From the IMG/VR virus record IMGVR_UViG_3300032288_004964, positions 62,001 to 126,000 of that record: 64,000 nucleotides of DNA; one strand, 5' to 3'. The translations under genes were made by a program, and so were the position numbers. Each line of letters opens with the position of its first letter. The stretch's first letter is position 1. The notes beneath the pieces were generated by a model, which was given only the letters and a program-made list of their open reading frames with translations, ran no database searches and was not told the DNA's origin. Shown here piece after piece: positions 3,932 to 52,417 of the stretch.

Positions 3932-5269
3932 CTATATATAAAAATAATCAGTATAATTATTTGACTTTAATCGGTATCTCATAATTTGTCTATCTATTCC
4001 CGATCCATCAACTGCTTTTGATATAGATTCATAAATAATTCCATTTATAGAGACCGATTTTAGTTTTGGTATGCCTGTTTCTTTTAACTCGACCACTTTA
4101 TCCAAATAAAACCAACTTGGATATGATTTTGAGTTAAGTCTCCAATTTATATAATCATGTGTTTTTTTTAATTCTTTTACAGCTTCTGTTATTGACCCAT
4201 ATTCTTTTCCTTCTATTGATATTCTTTCTTTTTTTGACAGATGTGGATCAACTTCAATAAATTTATTATACTTTATGTTTAGATCATTATCTTTGAATAG
4301 ATAGTTTTTGAAGTGAGATGACTTTAATCTTGAACGTATTAAAGACCTATCAATACTAAGTCTTTCAACAGATTCGGAAATAGATTTATATTCTATATTA
4401 TCAATGATTATTTCTTTTTTAGTCTCCTGGTCAAACTTTTTTCTTTTTTCTTGAAGTCTAATCTTTATTTTTAATTTTAAATCTTCGCCAATATATTCAT
4501 AAAATTTATATCTTCTTTTAAAAAATCTATTCGGTACACAATCAATATATAAAATTAAACCATCTATATCTTTTTCAATAATTAGTCTATCGATCTTATC
4601 AAATTCCTCATTTTCTCTAATTTTTAATTTTCCAAAAATATACCTTAAATCCTCCCCAAAGAACTCGTAAAAACCATAAGCATTTTTAAGAAAATTATGG
4701 TCTACTCTTTTTTTAATTAATGATAGTTCGTTTAGATAATCATCAATATTTCCAAATTTTATCTCGTTTCTAATAAATTCACATCTTTCTTTAAATTCAT
4801 CATTATATTTCTTCCACTTTTTTTCATTTTTTAATTTAGATTCTGTAGATAAAATACTCTTATGTATATTTTTTTTAAGATTTTCTTTGTATATCTTAGC
4901 TTTTTCCAAACCAAATGCTTCTTCATAGGTTTTACCCTTTTTGGGACTATTTTTAGATATCTTCTCTCTTATTAATTCTAAATCAGGATGATTAGATAGA
5001 GTATCTCCTCCATCACCACCAGGAGCGATATTATATCCTATTTTTCTATCAGTTGATTTATAATATGATATCCAATAAATCTCCTTCTTTGAAAGTACAT
5101 TATAGTCATCAGTTTCATCAATAATTTCTTTGATGAAATTTTCCATTCCATATTTTTTTAAAGACCTACTAATTATCAATCCTGATCCAAAATAGTTGGG
5201 ATCTGATGTGGTGTCTTTGCCTATATAAATTTTATTATTTACAAGATTGGTTATTTTATATATTTGCAT
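3932..5269 (-). mobile_element. Free-standing GIY-YIG (Seg-like) homing endonuclease
   Basis: QIYKITN..N.KIYIG, YFGSG, GYNI..GGDGG; three C-terminal Y.SI..A...L NUMOD1-like repeats. Confidence 0.85.
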
Positions 5270-5910: not shown

Positions 5911-6105
5911 TTATTTTAGTTCATTGAACTTTTCAATTTTGTTCTTTTTAACTTTTTCGAGTTCTTTTTCATCATGTTCAACTGGTTCAGTTTTGATATC
6001 AGGATTTAAATCCTTTTCCATTTCTAAAGAATCAGCATTAAATTCCATTTCTTGGTCTTTAGCTTTTTCTTCTTTAGTTTCGTTAAATCTTTTGATGTGT
6101 GTCAT
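5911..6105 (-). CDS. Small charged protein, putative head-packaged
   Basis: MTHIKRFNE N-terminus; in operon. Confidence 0.55.
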   Translation of the reverse strand: MTHIKRFNETKEEKAKDQEMEFNADSLEMEKDLNPDIKTEPVEHDEKELEKVKKNKIEKFNELK

Positions 6106-6107
6106 TT

Positions 6108-6431
6108 TTATTTACTAATTTTTTTAAGAACTTTAGCGCATTTTTCATACTCTTCATTTTCTTCCAGTTCTTTAAGATATTCTCTTAATTGTTCTTTATT
6201 AGATAATTCTAATTTTAGATTAAATCTAACTTCACCTAATTCTTTCATATCTTTTACTTGTTTATCTATTATTTTATTAATAACATCTCTTTTGAATTGT
6301 GACATTTTTGCAAATTCATTCCAATCATTTACACCATTATCTTTTAGAAAGTGTAAAATACCATCGGTACAAGAAGTTATTCTATCTATTGTAGATTCAA
6401 GTAAAAATTGATTATAATTATTTATTTTCAT
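6108..6431 (-). CDS. Hypothetical protein with C-terminal UVR-like motif
   Basis: MKINNYNQFLLES; EENEEYEKCAKV. Confidence 0.55.
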   Translation of the reverse strand: MKINNYNQFLLESTIDRITSCTDGILHFLKDNGVNDWNEFAKMSQFKRDVINKIIDKQVKDMKELGEVRFNLKLELSNKEQLREYLKELEENEEYEKCAKVLKKISK

Positions 6432-45361: not shown

Positions 45362-46690
45362 ATGACTCCACAACTAGAGAAAGTCTTCTTTAATTTTATA
45401 CTTAAAAACAAGAAGTTTTTCGACATAGTAAAGCCTTACTTTTTTAGAAATTCCGAGATACAATTTGTTTACGGTGTTATTAGAAACTATATGGTTAATA
45501 ATAATGACACACAAATTCCAAGTCCTCGTCAAATTCTAGACATGGTTGCTTTAGAAGATAAAGAAGGAGTAATAACAAAAGAAATCCTAAAGTCTATATT
45601 ACAAGTTGATCTTAAAGAATATGATGAAAAGAATTTTATTGAACCTAAATTTAATGCTTGGATTCTTTCTAATAGATTAAAAACAGGAACTGTTGATATT
45701 ATTGATGAAACAAGAAATTTAGATTCTATATCTGATTTTGAAAAAGCTGTTGAGGCAGCAAATAGAATAAAAGGTATAGTTGATGAAATGTCTTCAACAA
45801 ATTTTATTCAAGATGATGACTTAGGTTCAGATTTTGATGATGCTGAAAATCATGTTCAAGATTCTTCTAAATTTAAAGTTAAGTGTGGTTTTGAAAGTAT
45901 AGACCATATGTTAGGTGGTGGATGGGATATATCTACACTTAATGTAATTATGGCTGAAACTAATAATGGTAAATCATTATGGATGCAAAACTTTGCAGTT
46001 AGATCAGCTGATATGGGATTTAATGTTCTTTATGTAACTCTTGAGATGAGTGAAAGAAAAGTTATGAAAAGAATGGGAGCTATGCGTCTTAAACTTCCTA
46101 TCAATGATTATGATAAATTATCAAAAGATACTGATATGATTAAAAAGAGAATTGCTGCCTTATCTAAAGCAGATGGTGGTGATATCTTTGATAAAAAAGT
46201 TGGTAAGATTATTACTAAGTTTTGGGCAGCTGGTACTGCTACTGTTGCTGACTTTGATAATTATTTACAAAAATTAAAAGAGAAAAAAGATATTAAGATT
46301 GATTTAGTCATTGTTGATTATATTACTCTTGTGGCTGCTGCTAAAGGAACGGCTTCTGATAACCTTTATTCAAAAGGTAAACAGTTGGCTGAGGGATTAA
46401 GAGCAGTTGGTGCTAAATATAAGTGTCCAGTTATTACTGGTGTTCAAGTTGCTAAAGATGCTTGGAATGCTTCTGATATTACATTAGAAAGTGTACCAGA
46501 ATCTAAAGCAATTGCTGAAACAGCAGACACTTTCTTCGCTATAATAAGAACAGAAGAAATGAAAAGACAGAACTTATACAGATTTAAGTTATTGAAACAA
46601 AGAGATGGTGACTTTTTAAAGTCTCAAATTAGGTTAAGCTTGAATCCTATATATTTAACACTAGAAAATGATCAATTTATTGATCAATAA
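45362..46690 (+). CDS. Replicative helicase, DnaB/T4 gp41-like
   Basis: AETNNGKS, YVTLEMSE, VIVDYI, AEGLRA, ESKAI..TAD, LKQR. Confidence 0.9.
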   Translation: MTPQLEKVFFNFILKNKKFFDIVKPYFFRNSEIQFVYGVIRNYMVNNNDTQIPSPRQILDMVALEDKEGVITKEILKSILQVDLKEYDEKNFIEPKFNAWILSNRLKTGTVDIIDETRNLDSISDFEKAVEAANRIKGIVDEMSSTNFIQDDDLGSDFDDAENHVQDSSKFKVKCGFESIDHMLGGGWDISTLNVIMAETNNGKSLWMQNFAVRSADMGFNVLYVTLEMSERKVMKRMGAMRLKLPINDYDKLSKDTDMIKKRIAALSKADGGDIFDKKVGKIITKFWAAGTATVADFDNYLQKLKEKKDIKIDLVIVDYITLVAAAKGTASDNLYSKGKQLAEGLRAVGAKYKCPVITGVQVAKDAWNASDITLESVPESKAIAETADTFFAIIRTEEMKRQNLYRFKLLKQRDGDFLKSQIRLSLNPIYLTLENDQFIDQ

Positions 46691-46706
46691 TAAAAATAAA
46701 CTATTT

Positions 46707-47669
46707 ATGGCAAAAAAAGTTAGAGATGATGACGAATTCGAAGATGAATTTGAAAATGATAATGATGAGGTAGAAAATACCGAAGACATTCAAGATGAAC
46801 CAGATGATGAATCAGATGACTCTGATGATGACGGTAGTTCATCTATTATCAATGATGATGAAGATAAGATTGATATAGTTATCGAGATAGATGAGGATGA
46901 TCTTGATCTAAATGATGATGATGATATTAAAGAAGATTCTTCTGAAGAAGATGAGATTGTTCTTTCTAAACACAAAATGGAAGGAAAACACTCTCTTAAA
47001 TATGATTCAATCTTTAAGGGTAAAAAAGAAGATCCTTTAGATGAAGATAATCCGGATGGGTCAGCTCTTTACTACAAAGAATCAATAGAAGTTGATAAGT
47101 CATCAAACTACTATTTTGAGTCTATGGATAATGAAAACTACATTAGAACCAAATTAATAAAAGAAAAAGTTTATGTAGTTTTAAAAGATCATACAAGTAT
47201 GAACTTCTTAAATAATAGAAGAAAGCCTTCTAGAATTGACTTTAATAATTATTATGAGTTGTTAAAAACTAATCTAAAAGAAGAAAGTTTTACCAACATT
47301 GAGTTGTTTAATGAGTTGTCAGTTTACTTTTCGGATAATTTATTTAACATGTTTAAGTTATTGGATAATAAATGGAGAAACTTAATTATTAATGAGTTAC
47401 AAGAGCATATAGGTAGAACTAAAAATTCTAAGGAAATTTCAAATAGAAATATTTATATAGGAACAGAATTAGAATTTGATTGGATTGATAATGGTGAAGA
47501 TAAATTAATAACAGGTGTTGTAGTTGAAGTTGATTATGTTAATTCCGTATTTAAAATAGATTCTTATGAAAATATTTATGAAGTTGATATAAAACAAATC
47601 ACAAAAATATTGAATAATACTAAATTCAAGTATAATCTTAACAAATTAAACAACATAGATTTTCTTTAA
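46707..47669 (+). CDS. Hypothetical protein with very acidic N-terminus
   Basis: About 85-aa D/E tract; directly after helicase. Confidence 0.6.
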   Translation: MAKKVRDDDEFEDEFENDNDEVENTEDIQDEPDDESDDSDDDGSSSIINDDEDKIDIVIEIDEDDLDLNDDDDIKEDSSEEDEIVLSKHKMEGKHSLKYDSIFKGKKEDPLDEDNPDGSALYYKESIEVDKSSNYYFESMDNENYIRTKLIKEKVYVVLKDHTSMNFLNNRRKPSRIDFNNYYELLKTNLKEESFTNIELFNELSVYFSDNLFNMFKLLDNKWRNLIINELQEHIGRTKNSKEISNRNIYIGTELEFDWIDNGEDKLITGVVVEVDYVNSVFKIDSYENIYEVDIKQITKILNNTKFKYNLNKLNNIDFL

Positions 47670-47779
47670 AATTTTTATTTTTTAGGGTCATAAAAAACCT
47701 TAAAAAAAATAAGATGATGAAAATTGAGTTGAAACTTTAAATCGATATATAAAAAACAAAAAATTAAAATAATAAAAAT

Positions 47780-50332
47780 ATGAGCAGTATAAAAGTAATA
47801 AAAAGAAATGGAAAGAAAGAACCGGTGATGTTAGACAAGATTCTTGATAGAATCACACAACAAACTTATGGTCTTGATACTAAGTGGATTGTTCCATTTG
47901 AAATCGCACAGAAAGTTATAGAAGGTATTATGCCTGATATTAAAACATCTGTTTTAGATCAATTAGCTATGGAAACAGCAGCTTCATTGACTACAAAACA
48001 TCCAGATTATTCTGTCTTAGCAGCAAGATTAGCTATTACAAACCTACACAAAGAAACTAAAAAGAGTTTTTCAGAAACTGCTGAAGATTTATACAAATAT
48101 GTAAATCCAAAAACTGGAAAACACGCACCAATTGTTTCAGAATCTTTTTATAGCATTGTTAAAAAACACGCTGATGAATTAGATTCAGCTATTGTTCACT
48201 CAAGAGACCACAATTTTGATTACTTTGGTTTCAAAACTTTAGAAAAGTCTTATCTACTAAAAATTGATGGTAAAGTTGCTGAAAGACCTCAATATATGTA
48301 TATGAGAACTGCCTTACAAATATGGGGTGAGAATATTGAAAAGGTAGTTGAAACTTATAATACACTTTCTGAAGGATATTATACACATGCTACTCCAACT
48401 TTATTTAACTCTGGCACAACAAGACCACAATTATCATCTTGTTTCTTACTTGATGTTGAAGATGATTCAATTGAAGGTATCTTTAATACTCTTAAAGAAT
48501 CTGCTCAGATTTCTAAGAATGCTGGTGGTATAGGTATTGCTTTCTCTAAAGTTAGAGCTAAAGGAACTTATATTGCTGGTACTAATGGTACATCAAATGG
48601 TATTATTCCTTTCTTAAAAATCTACAATGAAACTGCAAGAGCTGTTGACCAAGGTGGTGGAAAAAGAAAAGGTTCAATCGCTATTTATATGGAACCTTGG
48701 CATTCAGATATTTTTGAATTCTTAGATTTAAGAAAGAATCAAGGTAAAGATGAAATAAGAGCTAGAGATTTATTTTTAGCTATGTGGATGAATGATTTAT
48801 TTATGGAAAGAGTTGAATTAGATGCTGATTGGTCATTAATGTGTCCACATGAGTGTCCTGAGTTAACAGAAACTTTTGGTGATGAATTCCGCAATATCTA
48901 TTTAAAATATGAATCTAGTGGAAAAGCTAAAAAAGTAGTTAAAGCAAGAGAAGTTTGGAATAAAATTCTTGAATCTCAAATTGAAACTGGAACTCCTTAT
49001 ATTCTTTATAAAGATGCTATTAATGAGAAGTCAAATCAAGCTAACATTGGTGTGATTAGAAGTTCCAACTTATGTGCTGAGATTGTAGAAGCAACTGGTA
49101 TTACTAAGATTCAAAATGAAATTTTACAAAATAAAGAATTACTTGAAAAAGCTGGACTTTCTGAGTTCTATGGTGAAGAATCGGTTAATGAAACTGCAGT
49201 TTGTAATTTAGCATCTATTGCACTTCCTAAGTTTGTTAATAAAAACAGAACTTATAACTTTAATAAGTTGTATGAAATTGCTTACTCAGCTATCATTAAC
49301 TTAAACAATGTTATTGATGTTAATTATTATCCATCTAGAGGTGCTAAGTTTTCTAACTTATTACACAGACCAGTTGGATTAGGTGTTCAGGGATTAGCTG
49401 ATGTTTTCTTCTCAATTGGAGTATCTTATGACTCAGATGAGGCAAAACAATTAAACAAGGAAATCTTTGAAACTATCTATTATGCTTCAATTAAAGCTTC
49501 TTGTGATTTAGCTAAAGAACAAGGGACTTATGCTACTTATGCTGGTTCTCCTATATCTCAAGGTAAATTCCAATTTGATTTATGGAATGTTAAACCAACT
49601 AAGAGATGGGATTGGGATAAATTAAGAGAAGAAGTTAAAAAACATGGTGTTAGAAACTCTTTAACAACTTGCATCATGCCAACTGCTTCTACTGCATCTA
49701 TTTTAGGTAATGAAGCTTCTTGTGAAGCACAAACATCTAATATGTACACAAGAGGTGTTCTTTCTGGTACCTTTATCTTAGTAAATAAATACTTAGTTAA
49801 GGAATTAGTTAAGTTAGGATTATGGAATGATAATTTGCGTAAGAAGATTATCAATGAGAATGGTTCAGTTCAGAATATTCCAGAAATTCCAACAGGATTG
49901 AAAGAGATTTTCAAAACAGTTTATGAAGTTAAACAAAAAGATGTTATTGATATGGCAGCTGATAGAGGAGCATTTATTGACCAAACGCAATCAATGAATA
50001 TCTTTATGGATTCTCCAAACTTTGCTAAATTAACATCAATGCACTTTTATGGTTGGGGTAGAAGAAACTTTATAACTGGAACTGATGGTCAACCTATTAT
50101 TCCACAAGGAAGTGATATTCAAGTTATCTATGATAAAGATGGTAACCCAAGATGTTATAGAGATAAGAAAGTTTCTCTTAAAACAGGAATCTACTATCTG
50201 AGAAATAAATCAGCAACTGATGCTGTTAAGTTTACAGTTCAAGAGGAACAAAAGAAATCAGTTGAAGAACAAATGGCTGAAATCAGTTGTTCACTTGACA
50301 ACCCAGATGATTGTTTAGCTTGTGGATCATAG
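47780..50332 (+). CDS. nrdA: Ribonucleotide reductase class Ia alpha subunit
   Basis: ATP cone VIKRNG, ATPTLFN, SSCF, SNLCAEI, MPTAST, TGIYYLR, C-terminal CLACGS. Confidence 0.97.
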   Translation: MSSIKVIKRNGKKEPVMLDKILDRITQQTYGLDTKWIVPFEIAQKVIEGIMPDIKTSVLDQLAMETAASLTTKHPDYSVLAARLAITNLHKETKKSFSETAEDLYKYVNPKTGKHAPIVSESFYSIVKKHADELDSAIVHSRDHNFDYFGFKTLEKSYLLKIDGKVAERPQYMYMRTALQIWGENIEKVVETYNTLSEGYYTHATPTLFNSGTTRPQLSSCFLLDVEDDSIEGIFNTLKESAQISKNAGGIGIAFSKVRAKGTYIAGTNGTSNGIIPFLKIYNETARAVDQGGGKRKGSIAIYMEPWHSDIFEFLDLRKNQGKDEIRARDLFLAMWMNDLFMERVELDADWSLMCPHECPELTETFGDEFRNIYLKYESSGKAKKVVKAREVWNKILESQIETGTPYILYKDAINEKSNQANIGVIRSSNLCAEIVEATGITKIQNEILQNKELLEKAGLSEFYGEESVNETAVCNLASIALPKFVNKNRTYNFNKLYEIAYSAIINLNNVIDVNYYPSRGAKFSNLLHRPVGLGVQGLADVFFSIGVSYDSDEAKQLNKEIFETIYYASIKASCDLAKEQGTYATYAGSPISQGKFQFDLWNVKPTKRWDWDKLREEVKKHGVRNSLTTCIMPTASTASILGNEASCEAQTSNMYTRGVLSGTFILVNKYLVKELVKLGLWNDNLRKKIINENGSVQNIPEIPTGLKEIFKTVYEVKQKDVIDMAADRGAFIDQTQSMNIFMDSPNFAKLTSMHFYGWGRRNFITGTDGQPIIPQGSDIQVIYDKDGNPRCYRDKKVSLKTGIYYLRNKSATDAVKFTVQEEQKKSVEEQMAEISCSLDNPDDCLACGS

Positions 50333-50351: not shown

Positions 50352-50386
50352 AAAAATAGGGAAAATTAAAAACTTTCCCTATTTTT
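50352..50386 (+). terminator. nrdA terminator
   Basis: AAAAATAGGGAAA..TTTCCCTATTTTT. Confidence 0.85.
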
Positions 50387-50471: not shown

Positions 50472-50497
50472 AAACTTTTAGAAAATTCTGAATATAA
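50472..50497 (+). promoter_or_regulatory. AAAC-N16-ATATAA promoter upstream of the non-coding unit
   Basis: Exact motif, with no credible + strand ORF before the terminator. Confidence 0.55.
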
Positions 50498-50530
50498 ATA
50501 AACCGTTCTTTAAAATACAATTAAATTACT

Positions 50531-50595
50531 CCAGTAGTAAATTGAAGTGTTACTTCGCAGGATATGAAAAAACACACTTTGATGATTTCCTCTGG
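50531..50595 (+). ncRNA. Candidate Y-RNA-like module 1
   Basis: CCAG/CTGG outer stem, internal loop TAGTAA/GATTTCCT, 10-bp stem ATTGAAGTGT/ACACTTTGAT, loop starting TACTTCG; upstream of Ro60. Confidence 0.55.
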
Positions 50596-50615
50596 TCAAT
50601 ATAATTAAAAGCAAA

Positions 50616-50661
50616 CATAGCGATAGTTTGAGATACTTCGATAAATATCAATTCAACTATA
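50616..50661 (+). ncRNA. Candidate Y-RNA-like module 2 (partial)
   Basis: TAGCG, stem ATAGTTTGA/TCAACTAT, second TACTTCG. Confidence 0.4.
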
Positions 50662-50676
50662 CAGAAAAAGTGACAA

Positions 50677-50881
50677 GCGACAGCAAGTCTACTGTATTCA
50701 AATAAAACCGAAAGGAGATTTGAATTAAAGTGAAAAAGTCCGAAAAGCAACCCCCGTTAAGGTCTAAGGAATTCAGCTGATTTTCCTTTAAATAAAAAGC
50801 TGAGTGATATGGTCACTACAACTATAGGCAAAGTTTAGGAGAGAATTCTTTGTAACGCTTAGGCTAAATTTACTTGTTTGC
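50677..50881 (+). ncRNA. Candidate long Y-RNA-like module 3
   Basis: Ends pair (GCGA/TTGC; AGTCTA/TAGGCT) around loop CAGCA/AAATTTACT; inner hairpins ATTCAAAT..CCGAAAGG..ATTTGAAT, ATTCAGCT/AGCTGAGT, AGTGA/TCACT. Confidence 0.5.
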
Positions 50882-50888
50882 AAATTAT

Positions 50889-50929
50889 AAAAGACCAGAT
50901 TAACATATGTTACTCTGGTCTTTTTTTTT
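50889..50929 (+). terminator. Strong intrinsic terminator between the ncRNA and the Ro60 gene
   Basis: AAAAGACCAGA-TTAACATATGTTAC-TCTGGTC followed by a long T tract. Confidence 0.85.
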
Positions 50930-50965
50930 GTAATTAAATTAAAATTAAAAATTAAAATATAGATT

Positions 50966-52417
50966 ATGTCAAAATTTAACACAACTGCCCCAAAGGCAAA
51001 AACTTTAACTGAAAACCTAGCAGGTGGTCAGGCTTACAAACAATCTGATGAACTAGCATTAGTATCATTGTTATTAACTTCATTTGTTAATGATCAATTC
51101 TATAAAAATGCTCAAACAACTCTTGAAGATTTAAGAAAACTTTCTGAGAAAGTAAAAGATAAAGAGTTTGTTGCGAAAGCCGCTATTTTCGCTCGTGACC
51201 GTTTTGGTATGAGAAGTATCACTCATGCTCTTGCTGGTGAATTAACTTCACAATTGAATGGTGCTGAGTGGGGTAAGAACTTCTATGATAAAGTAGTTGT
51301 CCGTGTTGATGATATGACAGAAATCATGTCATACTACTTAGCATATAAAACATCTAAGAATAATCCAAAGTTTCCAAATTCTTTGAAGAAAGGATTTGCT
51401 AAGGCTTTTGATAAATTTGACTCTTATCAACTTGCTAAATACAAAGGTGATAATAAGGAAGTTAAACTTGTTGACGTTGTGAACATTGTTCATCCAGTTC
51501 CAAATGCTAGAAACAAGTCTGCCTTAGAACAACTTATTAAAGGTGAACTAAAAAGCACAGATACTTGGGAATCTAAGTTATCACAAGCTGGTCAATTAGC
51601 TGAGTCTGAAGAAGATTTAACTAAATTAAAGTCTGATGCTTGGTCTGAGTTAATCATTGGTAAAAAGATTGGTTACTTTGCTCTTCTTAGAAATCTAAGA
51701 AACATTATTAACCAAGCTCCTACTGCTATTCCAGCAGCATGTGAGTTATTAGTTGATGAAAGAATGATTAAGAGCTCTAGGGTTCTTCCATTTAGATTCA
51801 CCACAGCTTATGATGAAATATCTAAGTTAGGTTCTTCTAAGGAAGTGCGTGATGTTTTAGTTGCTATCAATAAGGCTTTAGACATTTCAGTTTGTAATGT
51901 TCCAAAGTTTGATGGTGAAACATTAGTAGTTATGGATGTATCTGGATCAATGAGTGGTAAACCATCTGAAATAGCTTCATTATTTGGTGCTATTTTAGCT
52001 AAAGTTAATAACTCTGATGTTATGACTTTCTCTACTTCCGCTAACTATAAGCAATATAATCCAATGGATTCAGTATTGACTATTAGAGATGGATTTAGAT
52101 ATTCTGGTGGTGGAACAAACTTCCGTGCAATCTTTGAGAAGGCTAATAAGAAGTATGACAGAGTTATCATCTTGTCAGATATGCAAGGTTGGGTTGGTTA
52201 TGAAACACCAACTCGTCAATTTGCTGAGTATAAGAAAAAGTTTGGAGCTAATCCATTTGTTTACTCTTGGGATCTGGCTGGTCTTGGTACTTTACAGTTC
52301 CCAGAACAAAATGTCTTTGCTTTAGCCGGTTTTTCTGATAAAGTATTCGACATCATGAAGATGATGGAGTTGGACAAGAAAGCTCTTTACAATGAGATTA
52401 AGGATATACAGTTGTAA
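50966..52417 (+). CDS. rsr: Ro60/TROVE-domain RNA-binding protein with vWA domain
   Basis: N.AGG.AY, FY, YQLAKY, TWE..LS, ALLRNLRN, LPFRF..AY, MIDAS DVSGSM, GGT, ILSDMQ. Confidence 0.92.
   Translation: MSKFNTTAPKAKTLTENLAGGQAYKQSDELALVSLLLTSFVNDQFYKNAQTTLEDLRKLSEKVKDKEFVAKAAIFARDRFGMRSITHALAGELTSQLNGAEWGKNFYDKVVVRVDDMTEIMSYYLAYKTSKNNPKFPNSLKKGFAKAFDKFDSYQLAKYKGDNKEVKLVDVVNIVHPVPNARNKSALEQLIKGELKSTDTWESKLSQAGQLAESEEDLTKLKSDAWSELIIGKKIGYFALLRNLRNIINQAPTAIPAACELLVDERMIKSSRVLPFRFTTAYDEISKLGSSKEVRDVLVAINKALDISVCNVPKFDGETLVVMDVSGSMSGKPSEIASLFGAILAKVNNSDVMTFSTSANYKQYNPMDSVLTIRDGFRYSGGGTNFRAIFEKANKKYDRVIILSDMQGWVGYETPTRQFAEYKKKFGANPFVYSWDLAGLGTLQFPEQNVFALAGFSDKVFDIMKMMELDKKALYNEIKDIQL

What the first reader, a model, noticed from the sequence alone, without database searches (positions are those of the whole stretch)
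50531..50881. Three modules share a stem/internal-loop motif, a candidate new Ro-binding element
Modules 1 and 3 have the same base architecture: outer stem, then an internal loop with 5' YAGYA opposite 3' RATTT(C/A)CT, then an inner stem. They enclose very different payloads (about 23 nt versus about 170 nt with a GAAA-tetraloop hairpin and more stems). Modules 1 and 2 both carry TACTTCG at or near the end of the 5' stem strand. This looks like a constant protein-binding handle with variable effector domains, processed from one precursor.
Basis: partly seen in the sequence, partly recalled or inferred. Interest (0 to 1): 0.72.

Follow-up and report, generated by a model that had tools for sequence, protein, structure and literature searches.

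The report
Two phage Y RNAs beside Ro60
The stretch encodes two (not three) small structured RNAs of the known Y-RNA kind, sitting just upstream of a giant phage's Ro60 gene; both share a conserved docking stem found next to Ro60 genes in many phages and bacteria, and the larger one carries an undescribed 220-base pseudoknotted domain instead of the usual tRNA-like one.

Summary
There are two RNAs, not three. Y1 is 50531-50595 (65 nt).

Both are closed by the same handle: terminal stem, bulged U, 5-bp helix AGYRA/UUHCU with a central mismatch, 3-nt bulge on the 3' strand, 9-10-bp helix, then (W)UACUUCG. Covariation supports this in 17-21 relatives and in 48 distinct family members.

The handle occurs in at least 62 distinct modules in phage contigs. 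It also lies beside chromosomal Ro60 genes in bacteria, usually on the same strand and often in tandem. Payloads fall into three size classes: 60-77 nt, 100-180 nt (many with the YrlA order T-arm, stem-loop, D-arm) and 250-280 nt.

So this is the Ro60-binding module of bacterial and phage Y RNAs (YrlA/YrlB kind), not a new element. New here are the cross-phylum consensus including UUACUUCR, and Y2's non-tRNA payload with a covarying pseudoknot.

A lake metatranscriptome holds a Y2 relative at about 790x while the flanking genes read 0. That contig carries a head-to-tail junction, which remains unexplained. Binding to Ro60 is inferred, not shown.

The parts
50359..50386 (+). Intrinsic terminator of the upstream ribonucleotide reductase gene (GGGAAA / UUUCCC stem plus U run). 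It separates the RNA unit from the RNR gene.
   Evidence: Sequence read. The RNR large subunit (47780-50332) was identified by Pfam.
50472..50499 (+). Candidate promoter of the RNA unit: conserved box AAACTTTT (50472-79) and a -10-like TATAAAT (50493-99).
   Evidence: The box is at least 90% conserved in 19 relatives. The pattern is not enriched in the window: 2 matches against 0.83 expected. The promoter role is inferred only.
50531..50595 (+). Y1, a 65-nt hairpin Y RNA. P1 50531-34/50592-95; bulged U 50535; P2 50536-40/50587-91 (central U.C mismatch); 3' bulge 50584-86; P3 50541-50/50574-83; loop 50551-73 beginning UACUUCG and ending AAAAAAC.
   Evidence: Covariation. Covariance model R1 scores it 83.7 bits, E = 2e-16. 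Coordinates.
50551..50557 (+). UACUUCG motif of Y1, directly after the 5' strand of P3.
   Evidence: Invariant in 17 relatives. It reads WTACTTCG in 59 of 62 distinct modules; the other three read TTACATCG, CTACTTCG and TTACTTCA.
50611..50881 (+). P1 50611-17/50875-81; bulged U 50618; P2 50619-23/50870-74 (central C.A mismatch); 3' bulge 50867-69; P3 50624-32/50858-66; then AUACUUCG 50633-40; payload 50641-50857.
   Evidence: Pair counts on 21 relatives: GCAAACA/UGUUUGC changes to GAGGACA/UGUCCUC and to GCAAGCA/UGCUUGC. The handle finder reports it. The junction in an RNA-run contig places the RNA ends just outside P1.
50696..50725 (+).
   Evidence: A hairpin is present in relatives, but its sequence, length and tip vary.
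50766..50788 (+). Hairpin H-a (AAGGAA / UUCCUU). Its loop nucleotides 50774-78 form a pseudoknot with 50798-50802.
   Evidence: In a fixed register, loop positions 3-5 are paired in 14 of 14 relatives, with 4, 3 and 2 different pair types. That is 62 of 70 cells paired, against 19-33 of 70 when the register is slid.
50798..50817 (+). 3' strand of the pseudoknot (50798-50802), abutting hairpin H-b (AGUGA 50803-07 / UCACU 50813-17).
   Evidence: the H-b stem covaries: AGUGA/UCACU against CGUAU..ACACG.
50827..50853 (+). Hairpin H-c (GGCAAAG / CUUUGU) with a conserved 14-nt loop (50834-47, consensus UUUCGGGAGAAUU).
   Evidence: Six stacked covarying pairs.
50889..50929 (+). Strong intrinsic terminator (AAAAGACCAGA...UCUGGUC plus U9), 37 nt before the Ro60 start codon.
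   Evidence: Folded. Conserved in all 19 relatives. RNA-run depth stops here.
50966..52417 (+). Ro60 ortholog (TROVE plus vWA domains), 483 aa.
   Evidence: Pfam TROVE, E = 6e-17. Best solved relative is Thermus phage phiLo Ro60 (9KOP/9L5Y), E = 1e-23 over the full length. It is the only TROVE gene in the 385-kb genome.

Best explanation
The gap between the ribonucleotide reductase gene and the Ro60 gene of this roughly 385-kb phage is one transcription unit encoding two Y RNAs: Y1 (65 nt) and Y2 (271 nt).

Each RNA pairs its 5' and 3' ends into the same conserved handle: terminal stem, bulged U, AGYRA/UUHCU helix with a central mismatch, 3-nt bulge, a helix of one turn, then UACUUCG. This handle is the docking site for the phage Ro60 ring. 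It corresponds to the bulged Ro-binding stem plus AC stem and YUAY kink of bacterial YrlA.

The apical payload is the effector module. Y1 has only a 23-nt A-rich loop. [quoted passage not shown] Through the payload the RNP would recruit or regulate a partner, for example a host exoribonuclease such as PNPase. The terminator before Ro60 would set a high RNA-to-protein ratio.

Shown here: the structures by covariation, the family, the genomic linkage to Ro60, and high RNA abundance of a Y2 relative. Inferred: Ro60 binding, processing, and effector recruitment.
For: - Structure. Y1: 95.7% of cells paired, 10 pairs with compensatory changes, 0 of 500 shuffles reach this. Y2 handle: 91.8% paired with 7 compensatory pairs, against 26-60% when slid. 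Family alignment of 48 distinct hits: 94.6% paired, 15 of 18 pairs compensatory.
- Linkage to Ro60 in phage contigs. Ro60 lies in 17 of 32 module-bearing pattern loci. A whole-contig TROVE search of 15 of the loci lacking Ro60 found it in 7, including all 3 complete genomes.
- Linkage in named phages. TTACTTCR clusters beside Ro60 in crAss001, Gordonia phage VanLee, csAssE-Sib, Microcystis phage Mvi-JY20 and Thermus phage phiLo.
- Linkage in bacteria. 30 of 62 genome hits have Ro60 within 8 kb, and 21 of those also have a full module. Some lie on Mb-size chromosomes.
- Same handle around YrlA-type domains (T-arm, stem-loop, D-arm), for example L128:8123-8245 and L054:2901-3053.
- Literature. 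Bacteria have at least two Y RNAs upstream of rsr, processed from one precursor. YrlA has GNCGAAN0-1G near its 5' end and YUAY at nt 22-25 (PMC4201824), and 23-UA-24 is a conserved kink (10.1101/312249). The phiLo Ro60, the closest solved relative, binds two upstream Y-like RNAs and host PNPase (PMC12135203).
- Expression. A 322-nt contig of a Y2 relative has depth 793 in a lake metatranscriptome, while the Ro60 and RNR bins read 0.
Against: - No binding data exist for this Ro60, and the complex prediction was not run by the tool.
- The exact published motifs (GGUCCGA, GNCGAAN0-1G, CGAA) are absent from Y1 (AGUAA) and only partly present in Y2 (AGCGA).
- In one complete 299-kb genome the modules lie about 73 kb from Ro60. 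One relative (L122) has Y1, Y2 and the terminator with no TROVE match in its 103-kb contig fragment, estimated 18% complete.
- In csAssE-Sib the handle surrounds ordinary-order tRNAs, so the handle could also serve tRNA-related processing.
- Single-sequence folding z-scores are weak.
- The role of UACUUCG is unknown.
- The family alignment A3 was fitted to the model, which inflates the paired percentage.
Confidence: 0.8

Rival explanations
1. The handle is not a Ro60 site. It is a recognition or processing cassette for another factor, such as an RNase or a tRNA-maturation or repair enzyme, that flanks tRNAs, tRNA-like RNAs and other small RNAs. Ro60 is merely a frequent neighbour in the same RNA-repair neighbourhood.
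For: - In csAssE-Sib the handle encloses the annotated tRNA-Tyr and tRNA-Lys.
- ARAGORN calls tRNAs inside three modules.
- Some modules lie 12-73 kb from Ro60.
- UACUUCG has no described role in Ro binding.
Against: - All complete genomes tested that carry modules also encode Ro60.
- Modules are typically directly upstream of Ro60 and co-oriented with it, in hosts from many phyla.
- The bulged-helix layout and the positions of AGYRA and UA match the published Ro-binding stem of YrlA (PMC4201824; 10.1101/312249).
Confidence: 0.1
2. The region is a structured 5' leader of the Ro60 mRNA that regulates Ro60 expression in cis (attenuation or autoregulation), not a set of trans-acting RNAs.
For: - Only 37 nt separate the terminator from the Ro60 start codon, with no promoter-like site on the + strand in between. 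Ro60 is therefore probably expressed by read-through.
Against: - A Y2 relative accumulates at about 790x with Ro60 at 0.
- Modules occur downstream of Ro60 (crAss001) or tens of kb away from it.
- The same handle carries YrlA-type domains known to act in trans (PMC4201824).
Confidence: 0.05
3. One reading: three independent modules, with module 3 (about 205 nt) closed by 50674-50680 pairing with 50874-50880, and module 2 a separate local hairpin.
For: - In the window itself CAAGCGA/UUGUUUG and AGUCUA/UAGGCU can pair.
- The local hairpin AUAGUU/AACUAU is 80.5% paired across relatives.
Against: - The local hairpin shows no compensatory change.
- The alternative P1/P2/P3 model covaries and reproduces the family-wide handle exactly.
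- The RNA-run junction puts the ends at about 50607 and just past 50881, not at 50674.
Confidence: 0.03

Closest known systems
Bacterial and phage YrlA Y RNAs (Chen et al. 2014, PMC4201824; Wang et al. 2018, bioRxiv 10.1101/312249)
   Same: - Encoded next to Ro60 (rsr) and co-oriented with it.
- Several Y RNAs per locus, made from one precursor.
- The 5' and 3' ends form a bulged stem (the Ro-binding module) that continues into an 'AC' stem and ends at a conserved YUAY / UA element about 22-25 nt from the 5' end.
- Many modules with the identical handle in other phages and bacteria carry the YrlA order T-arm, closed stem-loop, D-arm.
   Different: - Neither window RNA has a tRNA-like domain: ARAGORN finds none and the Rfam tRNA model gives no hit at E up to 10.
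- The published motif GNCGAAN0-1G is replaced by U-bulge plus AGUAA (Y1) or AGCGA (Y2).
- The 8-mer UUACUUCR is much more strictly conserved than the published YUAY.
- Y2's payload is a 220-nt pseudoknotted domain of unknown type.
YrlB / Yrn2-type short Y RNAs (PMC4201824)
   Same: Y1 is the short second Y RNA of the locus: a single long hairpin sharing the Ro-binding stem.
   Different: The described YrlB-type RNAs have a small pyrimidine-rich loop. Y1 has a 23-nt loop that starts with UACUUCG and ends in an A run.
Yrl1 and Yrl2 of Thermus phage phiLo with phiLo Ro60 (PMC12135203; PDB 9KOP, 9L5Y)
   Same: - This is the closest solved Ro60 (E = 1e-23).
- Two Y-like RNAs lie upstream of a phage Ro60.
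- Stem-bulge-stem layout; binding to Ro60 and to host PNPase was shown in vitro.
   Different: - The phiLo RNAs were defined by CGAA motifs and single-sequence folding.
- The phiLo upstream region also contains UUUACUUCGG (L149:1288). I could not fit a full handle around it.
- Ro60 identity to the window protein is only 25%.
Metazoan Y RNAs
   Same: Terminal stem with a single bulged nucleotide on the 5' strand and an asymmetric bulge on the 3' strand flanking a short conserved helix that Ro60 reads. The apical loop serves as the effector module. This comparison rests on PMC12135203, PMC4201824 and my own recollection.
   Different: Different conserved sequence (GGUCCGA), Pol III genes, and no UACUUCG element.

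Membership tests
Y RNA (Ro60-associated ncRNA) | Gene lies next to a Ro60/TROVE ortholog and is co-oriented with it | tested here: met
   Y1 and Y2 end 371 and 85 nt upstream of the Ro60 start codon, on the same strand. The arrangement is the same in 19 or more relatives.
Y RNA (Ro60-associated ncRNA) | The 5' and 3' ends pair into a long stem interrupted by bulges | tested here: met
   Covariation for P1, P2 and P3 in Y1, in Y2 and across the family.
Y RNA (Ro60-associated ncRNA) | Conserved Ro-contact sequence in the 5' strand (GGUCCGA, GNCGAAN0-1G or CGAA) | tested here: inconclusive
   Y1 has U-AGUAA and Y2 has U-AGCGA (containing CGA) at the equivalent position. The family consensus is U-AGYRA. 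This resembles the published motifs but does not match them.
Y RNA (Ro60-associated ncRNA) | Bound by Ro60, and stabilised by it | not testable with these tools
   Complex prediction did not fold the protein-RNA job. No wet-lab data exist.
Y RNA (Ro60-associated ncRNA) | Accumulates as a discrete, abundant small RNA | tested here: inconclusive
   A contig of a Y2 relative has depth 793 in one lake metatranscriptome while flanking bins read 0. This is a relative rather than this genome, from assembled contigs only. Y1 was not seen.
YrlA | tRNA-like effector domain with the T-arm 5' of a closed stem-loop and the D-arm | tested here: not met
   There is no tRNA or T-loop signal in Y1 or Y2. The domain is present in other modules with the same handle.
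YrlA | Conserved YUAY / UA at the top of the stem, about 22-25 nt from the 5' end | tested here: met
   Counting from the first base of P1, UUAC falls at nt 20-23 in Y1 and AUAC at nt 23-26 in Y2. Compare PMC4201824 and 10.1101/312249.
YrlB-type short Y RNA | [quoted passage not shown] | tested here: not met
   Y1 is a long hairpin, but its loop is 23 nt and A-rich.
Any Rfam family | Score at or above the family's gathering threshold | tested here: not met
   No hit in the window. Only chance-level hits at E up to 10. Rfam also gave no Y-RNA hit at a Gordonia phage YrlA-like locus, so it probably holds no YrlA model.

The most novel reading that the evidence does not exclude
Y2 is circularised in vivo. 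The P1 stem of the Ro handle brings the trimmed 5' leader and 3' trailer together, and a host RNA ligase (RtcB-type; the phage has none) joins them. This would give a nuclease-resistant circular Y RNA of about 290 nt.

The evidence is a closed 292-nt assembly circle with a head-to-tail junction (50881 joined to 50607 through 9 extra letters), at depth about 790, in one metatranscriptome. No tandem Y2-Y2 DNA was found in 2.9 million viral contigs or 241 million metagenome contigs.

Not excluded: reverse-transcriptase template switching at the AAUUA microhomology shared by both flanks, with only a few junction reads closing the assembly graph.
Probability: 0.2. Interest if true: 0.8.

Novelty: new variant of a known kind. 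Interest (0 to 1): 0.5.

Why it matters
- It gives a sharp, testable consensus for the Ro60-docking module: bulged U, AGYRA/UUHCU, one helical turn, then UUACUUCR. The consensus holds from giant freshwater phages and crAss-like gut phages to actinophages and bacterial chromosomes. It can be used to find Y RNAs that tRNA-based searches miss.
- The docking module acts as a cassette carrying quite different cargos: a bare loop, permuted tRNA-like domains, ordinary-looking tRNAs, or a 220-nt pseudoknotted domain. Ro60 RNPs may therefore be aimed at more than one kind of partner.
- Several 'tRNA' annotations beside phage Ro60 genes are probably parts of Y RNAs.
- Cultured systems exist in which this could be tested, for example crAss001 on Bacteroides and Gordonia phage VanLee.
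- If the head-to-tail junction reflects real circles, it would be a new way of stabilising a Y RNA.

Tried and rejected
- Rfam: nothing at gathering scores; only chance-level hits at E up to 10.
- tRNA or tmRNA: none in the window.
- Model R1 on Y2, with filters off, did not bridge the 219-nt insert. Y2's handle was instead shown by pair counts and by my own finder.
- Complex prediction of Ro60 with Y1: the job was counted but not folded, so it is no evidence either way.
- The first DNA pattern for the handle was too loose. Of its 118 loci, 86 had no full module. The covariance model and the finder were used to separate real modules from chance matches.
It is kept only as a possible alternative conformer.
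- Internal copy of W-AGCGA-N9-UAC at 50675-50693 as a nested second handle: no matching 3' half. In divergent relatives this region is a small hairpin.
- Pairing of Y1's CCAG with the terminator's CUGGUC: no covariation in L019 and L020.
- Promoter box AAACTTTT...TATAA as a general phage promoter: 2 matches against 0.83 expected, not significant.
- RtcB in the phage genome: absent.
- Tandem Y2-Y2 DNA: absent from the viral and metagenome contig collections.
- Folding energy compared with shuffles: weak. The structures rest on covariation, not on energy.
- Vibrio phage SRILMA and Caulobacter phage CcrColossus Ro60 loci: no R1 hit.

Full report
**Setting.** The window is AT-rich (28% GC). It is bases 62001-126000 of a 385-kb virus record estimated 95% complete. 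Its nearest named relative is the 634-kb uncultured phage LR745206.1 (Ro60 81% identical), which appears in papers on marine and freshwater megaphages. The finding lies in a 633-nt gap between a ribonucleotide reductase large subunit (47780-50332) and a 483-aa TROVE plus vWA protein (50966-52417), both on the + strand. That protein is a Ro60 ortholog. Its best solved relative is the Ro60 of Thermus phage phiLo (E = 1e-23, full length), followed by Deinococcus Rsr and vertebrate Ro60. It is the only TROVE gene in the genome. The gap begins with the RNR terminator (50359-50386) and ends with a strong intrinsic terminator (50889-50929), 37 nt before the Ro60 ATG.

**Checking the observation.** Fetching Ro60 relatives from IMG/VR gave 19 loci, plus LR745206. 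All have a conserved upstream RNA region. TACTTCG occurs twice in the window (50551-57 and 50634-40) and is invariant in every relative.

Module 1 is real. It consists of:
- P1, CCAG/CUGG. This becomes CCG/CGG in two relatives, where one base pair has been deleted from both strands.
- A bulged U.
- A 5-bp helix AGYRA/UUHCU whose middle position is always a pyrimidine opposite A, C or U.
- A 3-nt bulge on the 3' strand.
- A 10-bp helix in which 9 of 10 pairs show compensatory changes.

Overall 95.7% of cells are paired, against 31-51% when the partner is slid, and 0 of 500 shuffles reach the observed values.

**Two RNAs, not three.** Compensatory changes include GCAAACA/UGUUUGC to GAGGACA/UGUCCUC, to GACAAAUA/UAUUUGUC, and to GCAAGCA/UGCUUGC. 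In P3, UGAG pairs with CUUA, CUCA, or (as UAAG) CUUA. On 21 relatives this model is 91.8% paired with 7 doubly changed pairs. Y2 (50611-50881, 271 nt) thus has exactly the same handle as Y1. A handle finder written independently of the covariance model reports exactly these two modules in the 64-kb window, and none in shuffled sequence. Single-sequence folding energies are only weakly better than shuffles (z = -1.2 and -1.3), so the case rests on covariation.

**The handle is a widespread family tied to Ro60.**
- *Family and covariation.* A covariance model of Y1 (R1) and the finder detect 62 distinct modules in IMG/VR contigs, often 2-5 per locus on one strand. The outer stem varies freely (27 different 4-bp combinations). 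The core is nearly fixed: U-AG[UC][AG]A, (U/A)UACUUCG in 59 of 62, and UU[UAC]CU. On 48 distinct hits, 94.6% of cells pair and 15 of 18 pairs change on both sides, with the caveat that this alignment was fitted to the model.
- *Phage contigs.* Ro60 lies within 17 of the 32 module-bearing pattern loci. A whole-contig search of 15 loci without a nearby Ro60 found TROVE in 7, including all 3 complete genomes. In one 299-kb genome the modules are about 73 kb from Ro60.
- *Named phages.* TTACTTCR clusters beside Ro60, on its strand, in crAss001 (4 copies in the unannotated 900 nt after gp96), Gordonia phage VanLee (3), csAssE-Sib (2), Microcystis phage Mvi-JY20 (3) and Thermus phage phiLo (1).
- *Bacterial genomes.* A scan for handle plus T-loop gave 62 loci. 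Of these, 30 have Ro60 within 8 kb and 21 also have a full module, directly upstream and co-oriented. Some are on Mb-size chromosomes of Bacteroidota, Verrucomicrobiota and others.

**What it is.** Module sizes fall into three classes: 60-77 nt, 100-180 nt and 250-280 nt. Thirteen modules, nearly all in the middle class, contain a T-loop. Several of these show the YrlA order: handle, UUACUUCG, T-arm, closed stem-loop, D-arm, handle. Examples are L128:8123-8245, L054:2901-3053, L096:7776-7945 and VanLee.

Chen et al. (PMC4201824) describe YrlA as a Ro-binding stem plus a permuted tRNA-like module. It has GNCGAAN0-1G near the 5' end and a conserved YUAY at nt 22-25. They report at least two Y RNAs per species, encoded upstream of rsr and cut from one precursor. 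Wang et al. (10.1101/312249) show that 23-UA-24 is a conserved kink at the top of the stem. In the window RNAs, AGYRA occupies the position of the CGAA-type motif (Y2 actually reads AGCGA) and UUAC/AUAC occupies the YUAY position.

I therefore read the handle as the Y-RNA Ro60-binding module in a divergent, AT-rich form, with Y1 and Y2 as the locus's two Y RNAs. Neither has a tRNA-like domain, so neither is a YrlA in the strict sense. Rfam gives no hit. It seems to hold no YrlA model, because the VanLee locus is also silent.

**Y2's payload.** Downstream of AUACUUCG, relatives share:
- a small hairpin region (about 50671-50693);
- the conserved stretch GGUGAAAAAGUCC;
- hairpin H-a (50766-88);
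- hairpin H-b (50803-17);
- hairpin H-c (50827-53).

The loop of H-a pairs with the bases just 5' of H-b in a fixed register. At the three central positions all 14 relatives are paired, using 4, 3 and 2 different pair types (UUCAG/CUGAG, AGUUU/AAACU, UUCAUA/UAUGAG, UUUAUC/GAUAGG, GUUUU/AAAAC). That is 62 of 70 cells paired, against 19-33 of 70 when slid. The payload is thus a folded, pseudoknotted domain of no recognised type. Three relatives lack H-a, so even this domain is modular.

**Expression.** Four public RNA runs hold parts of the region. In one lake metatranscriptome a 322-nt contig of a Y2 relative (L005-like) has word depth 793, while the RNR and Ro60 bins read 0. That fits a stable, abundant RNA and efficient termination before Ro60. 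Low-depth contigs bridge the Y1 3' end and the Y2 5' end, consistent with a common precursor, although DNA carry-over cannot be excluded.

The abundant contig joins 50881 back to 50607 through 9 letters (GCAAATTAA), and its two ends overlap. It is therefore a closed circle of about 292 nt: Y2 plus a short 3' trailer and 5' leader. No tandem Y2-Y2 DNA exists in IMG/VR or in the JGI metagenome contigs. The junction thus arose at the RNA or cDNA level. Either way it places the RNA ends just outside P1, which independently supports Y2 as one molecule. The phage has no RtcB.

**Mechanism.**
- *Shown:* the structures, the family, the linkage to Ro60, and the abundance of a relative.
- *Inferred by homology of layout with Xenopus, Deinococcus, Salmonella and phiLo RNPs* (PMC4201824, PMC12135203): Ro60 binds the bulged handle. 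The strictly spaced UUACUUCR, one helical turn above, either completes the protein contact or forms the kink that orients the payload. The payload recruits a partner; host PNPase is the precedent.
- *Also inferred:* the terminator 37 nt before the ATG suggests Ro60 is made by read-through, giving an excess of RNA over protein.
- *Attempted:* a protein-RNA complex prediction was not folded by the tool.

**Verdict.** The element belongs to a known kind (bacterial and phage Y RNAs). It shows a sharper and broader consensus than I could find described, a new type of effector domain, and an unexplained head-to-tail junction.

Noticed in passing
window 50607-50881 (RNA run X3): A 322-nt metatranscriptome contig of a Y2 relative (depth 793) closes on itself. 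It joins 50881 to 50607 through GCAAATTAA, giving a circle of about 292 nt. No tandem Y2 DNA was found in the viral or metagenome contig collections. It could be circular RNA or a template-switch artefact.
   Followed up: partly
L146:4637-4771 and L146:4790-4915 (phage csAssE-Sib): The annotated tRNA-Tyr and tRNA-Lys directly upstream of the Ro60 gene are each enclosed by a Y-RNA handle (U-GGUGA / U-GAUGG ... UUACUUCG ... UUUCC). They may be cargo or domains of Y RNAs rather than free-standing tRNA genes.
   Followed up: partly
L142:5900-6520 (Bacteroides phage crAss001, downstream of TROVE gp96): An unannotated 900-nt gap holds four (G)UUACUUCA motifs. Two are followed by T-arm-like GGUUCAAGUCC / GGUUCGAGUCC, and there is a 144-nt Rfam tRNA hit (6084-6227). 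This is a probable Y RNA cluster in a cultured phage.
   Followed up: partly
L144:4560-4900 (Gordonia phage VanLee): There are three GGUUACUUCR modules upstream of Ro60, two of them with a T-arm then a D-arm (YrlA order). The annotated tRNA-Arg(tct) at 4704-4775 overlaps one of them and gets no Rfam tRNA hit at the gathering score.
   Followed up: partly
L149:1288 (Thermus phage phiLo, 190 nt upstream of Ro60): UUUACUUCGG occurs in the region from which the published Yrl1 and Yrl2 were defined by CGAA motifs. I could not fit a full handle around it.
   Followed up: partly
L122:5613-5968: A relative has Y1, Y2 and the terminator, but no Ro60 follows, and no TROVE match appears anywhere in its 103-kb contig (estimated 18% complete).
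   Followed up: partly
L015, L016 and L018, between the terminator and the Ro60 start (alignment A1, columns about 810-900): Three relatives carry an extra stretch of about 70-100 nt with complementary ends (CUCGUG...CACGAG) inserted between the Y-unit terminator and Ro60. It may be a further small structured element.
   Followed up: no
It has no matching 3' half. In divergent relatives the region forms a small hairpin (GGCU-GGUCA-AGCC).
   Followed up: partly
window 50655-50660 and 50820-50825: There are two conserved copies of AACUAU. Each is complementary to AUAGUU of P3's 5' strand (50623-28), so alternative conformers of Y2 are possible.
   Followed up: no
window 50550-50750 (-) and 50788-50982 (-): Two antisense ORFs of 66 and 64 aa overlap the RNA genes. 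They are listed only mechanically and are most likely not genes.
   Followed up: no
window 45362-50332: Upstream genes are a DnaB-like helicase (45362-46690) and a class I-type ribonucleotide reductase large subunit with an ATP cone (47780-50332). Caulobacter phage CcrColossus likewise has RNR genes shortly upstream of its TROVE gene.
   Followed up: no
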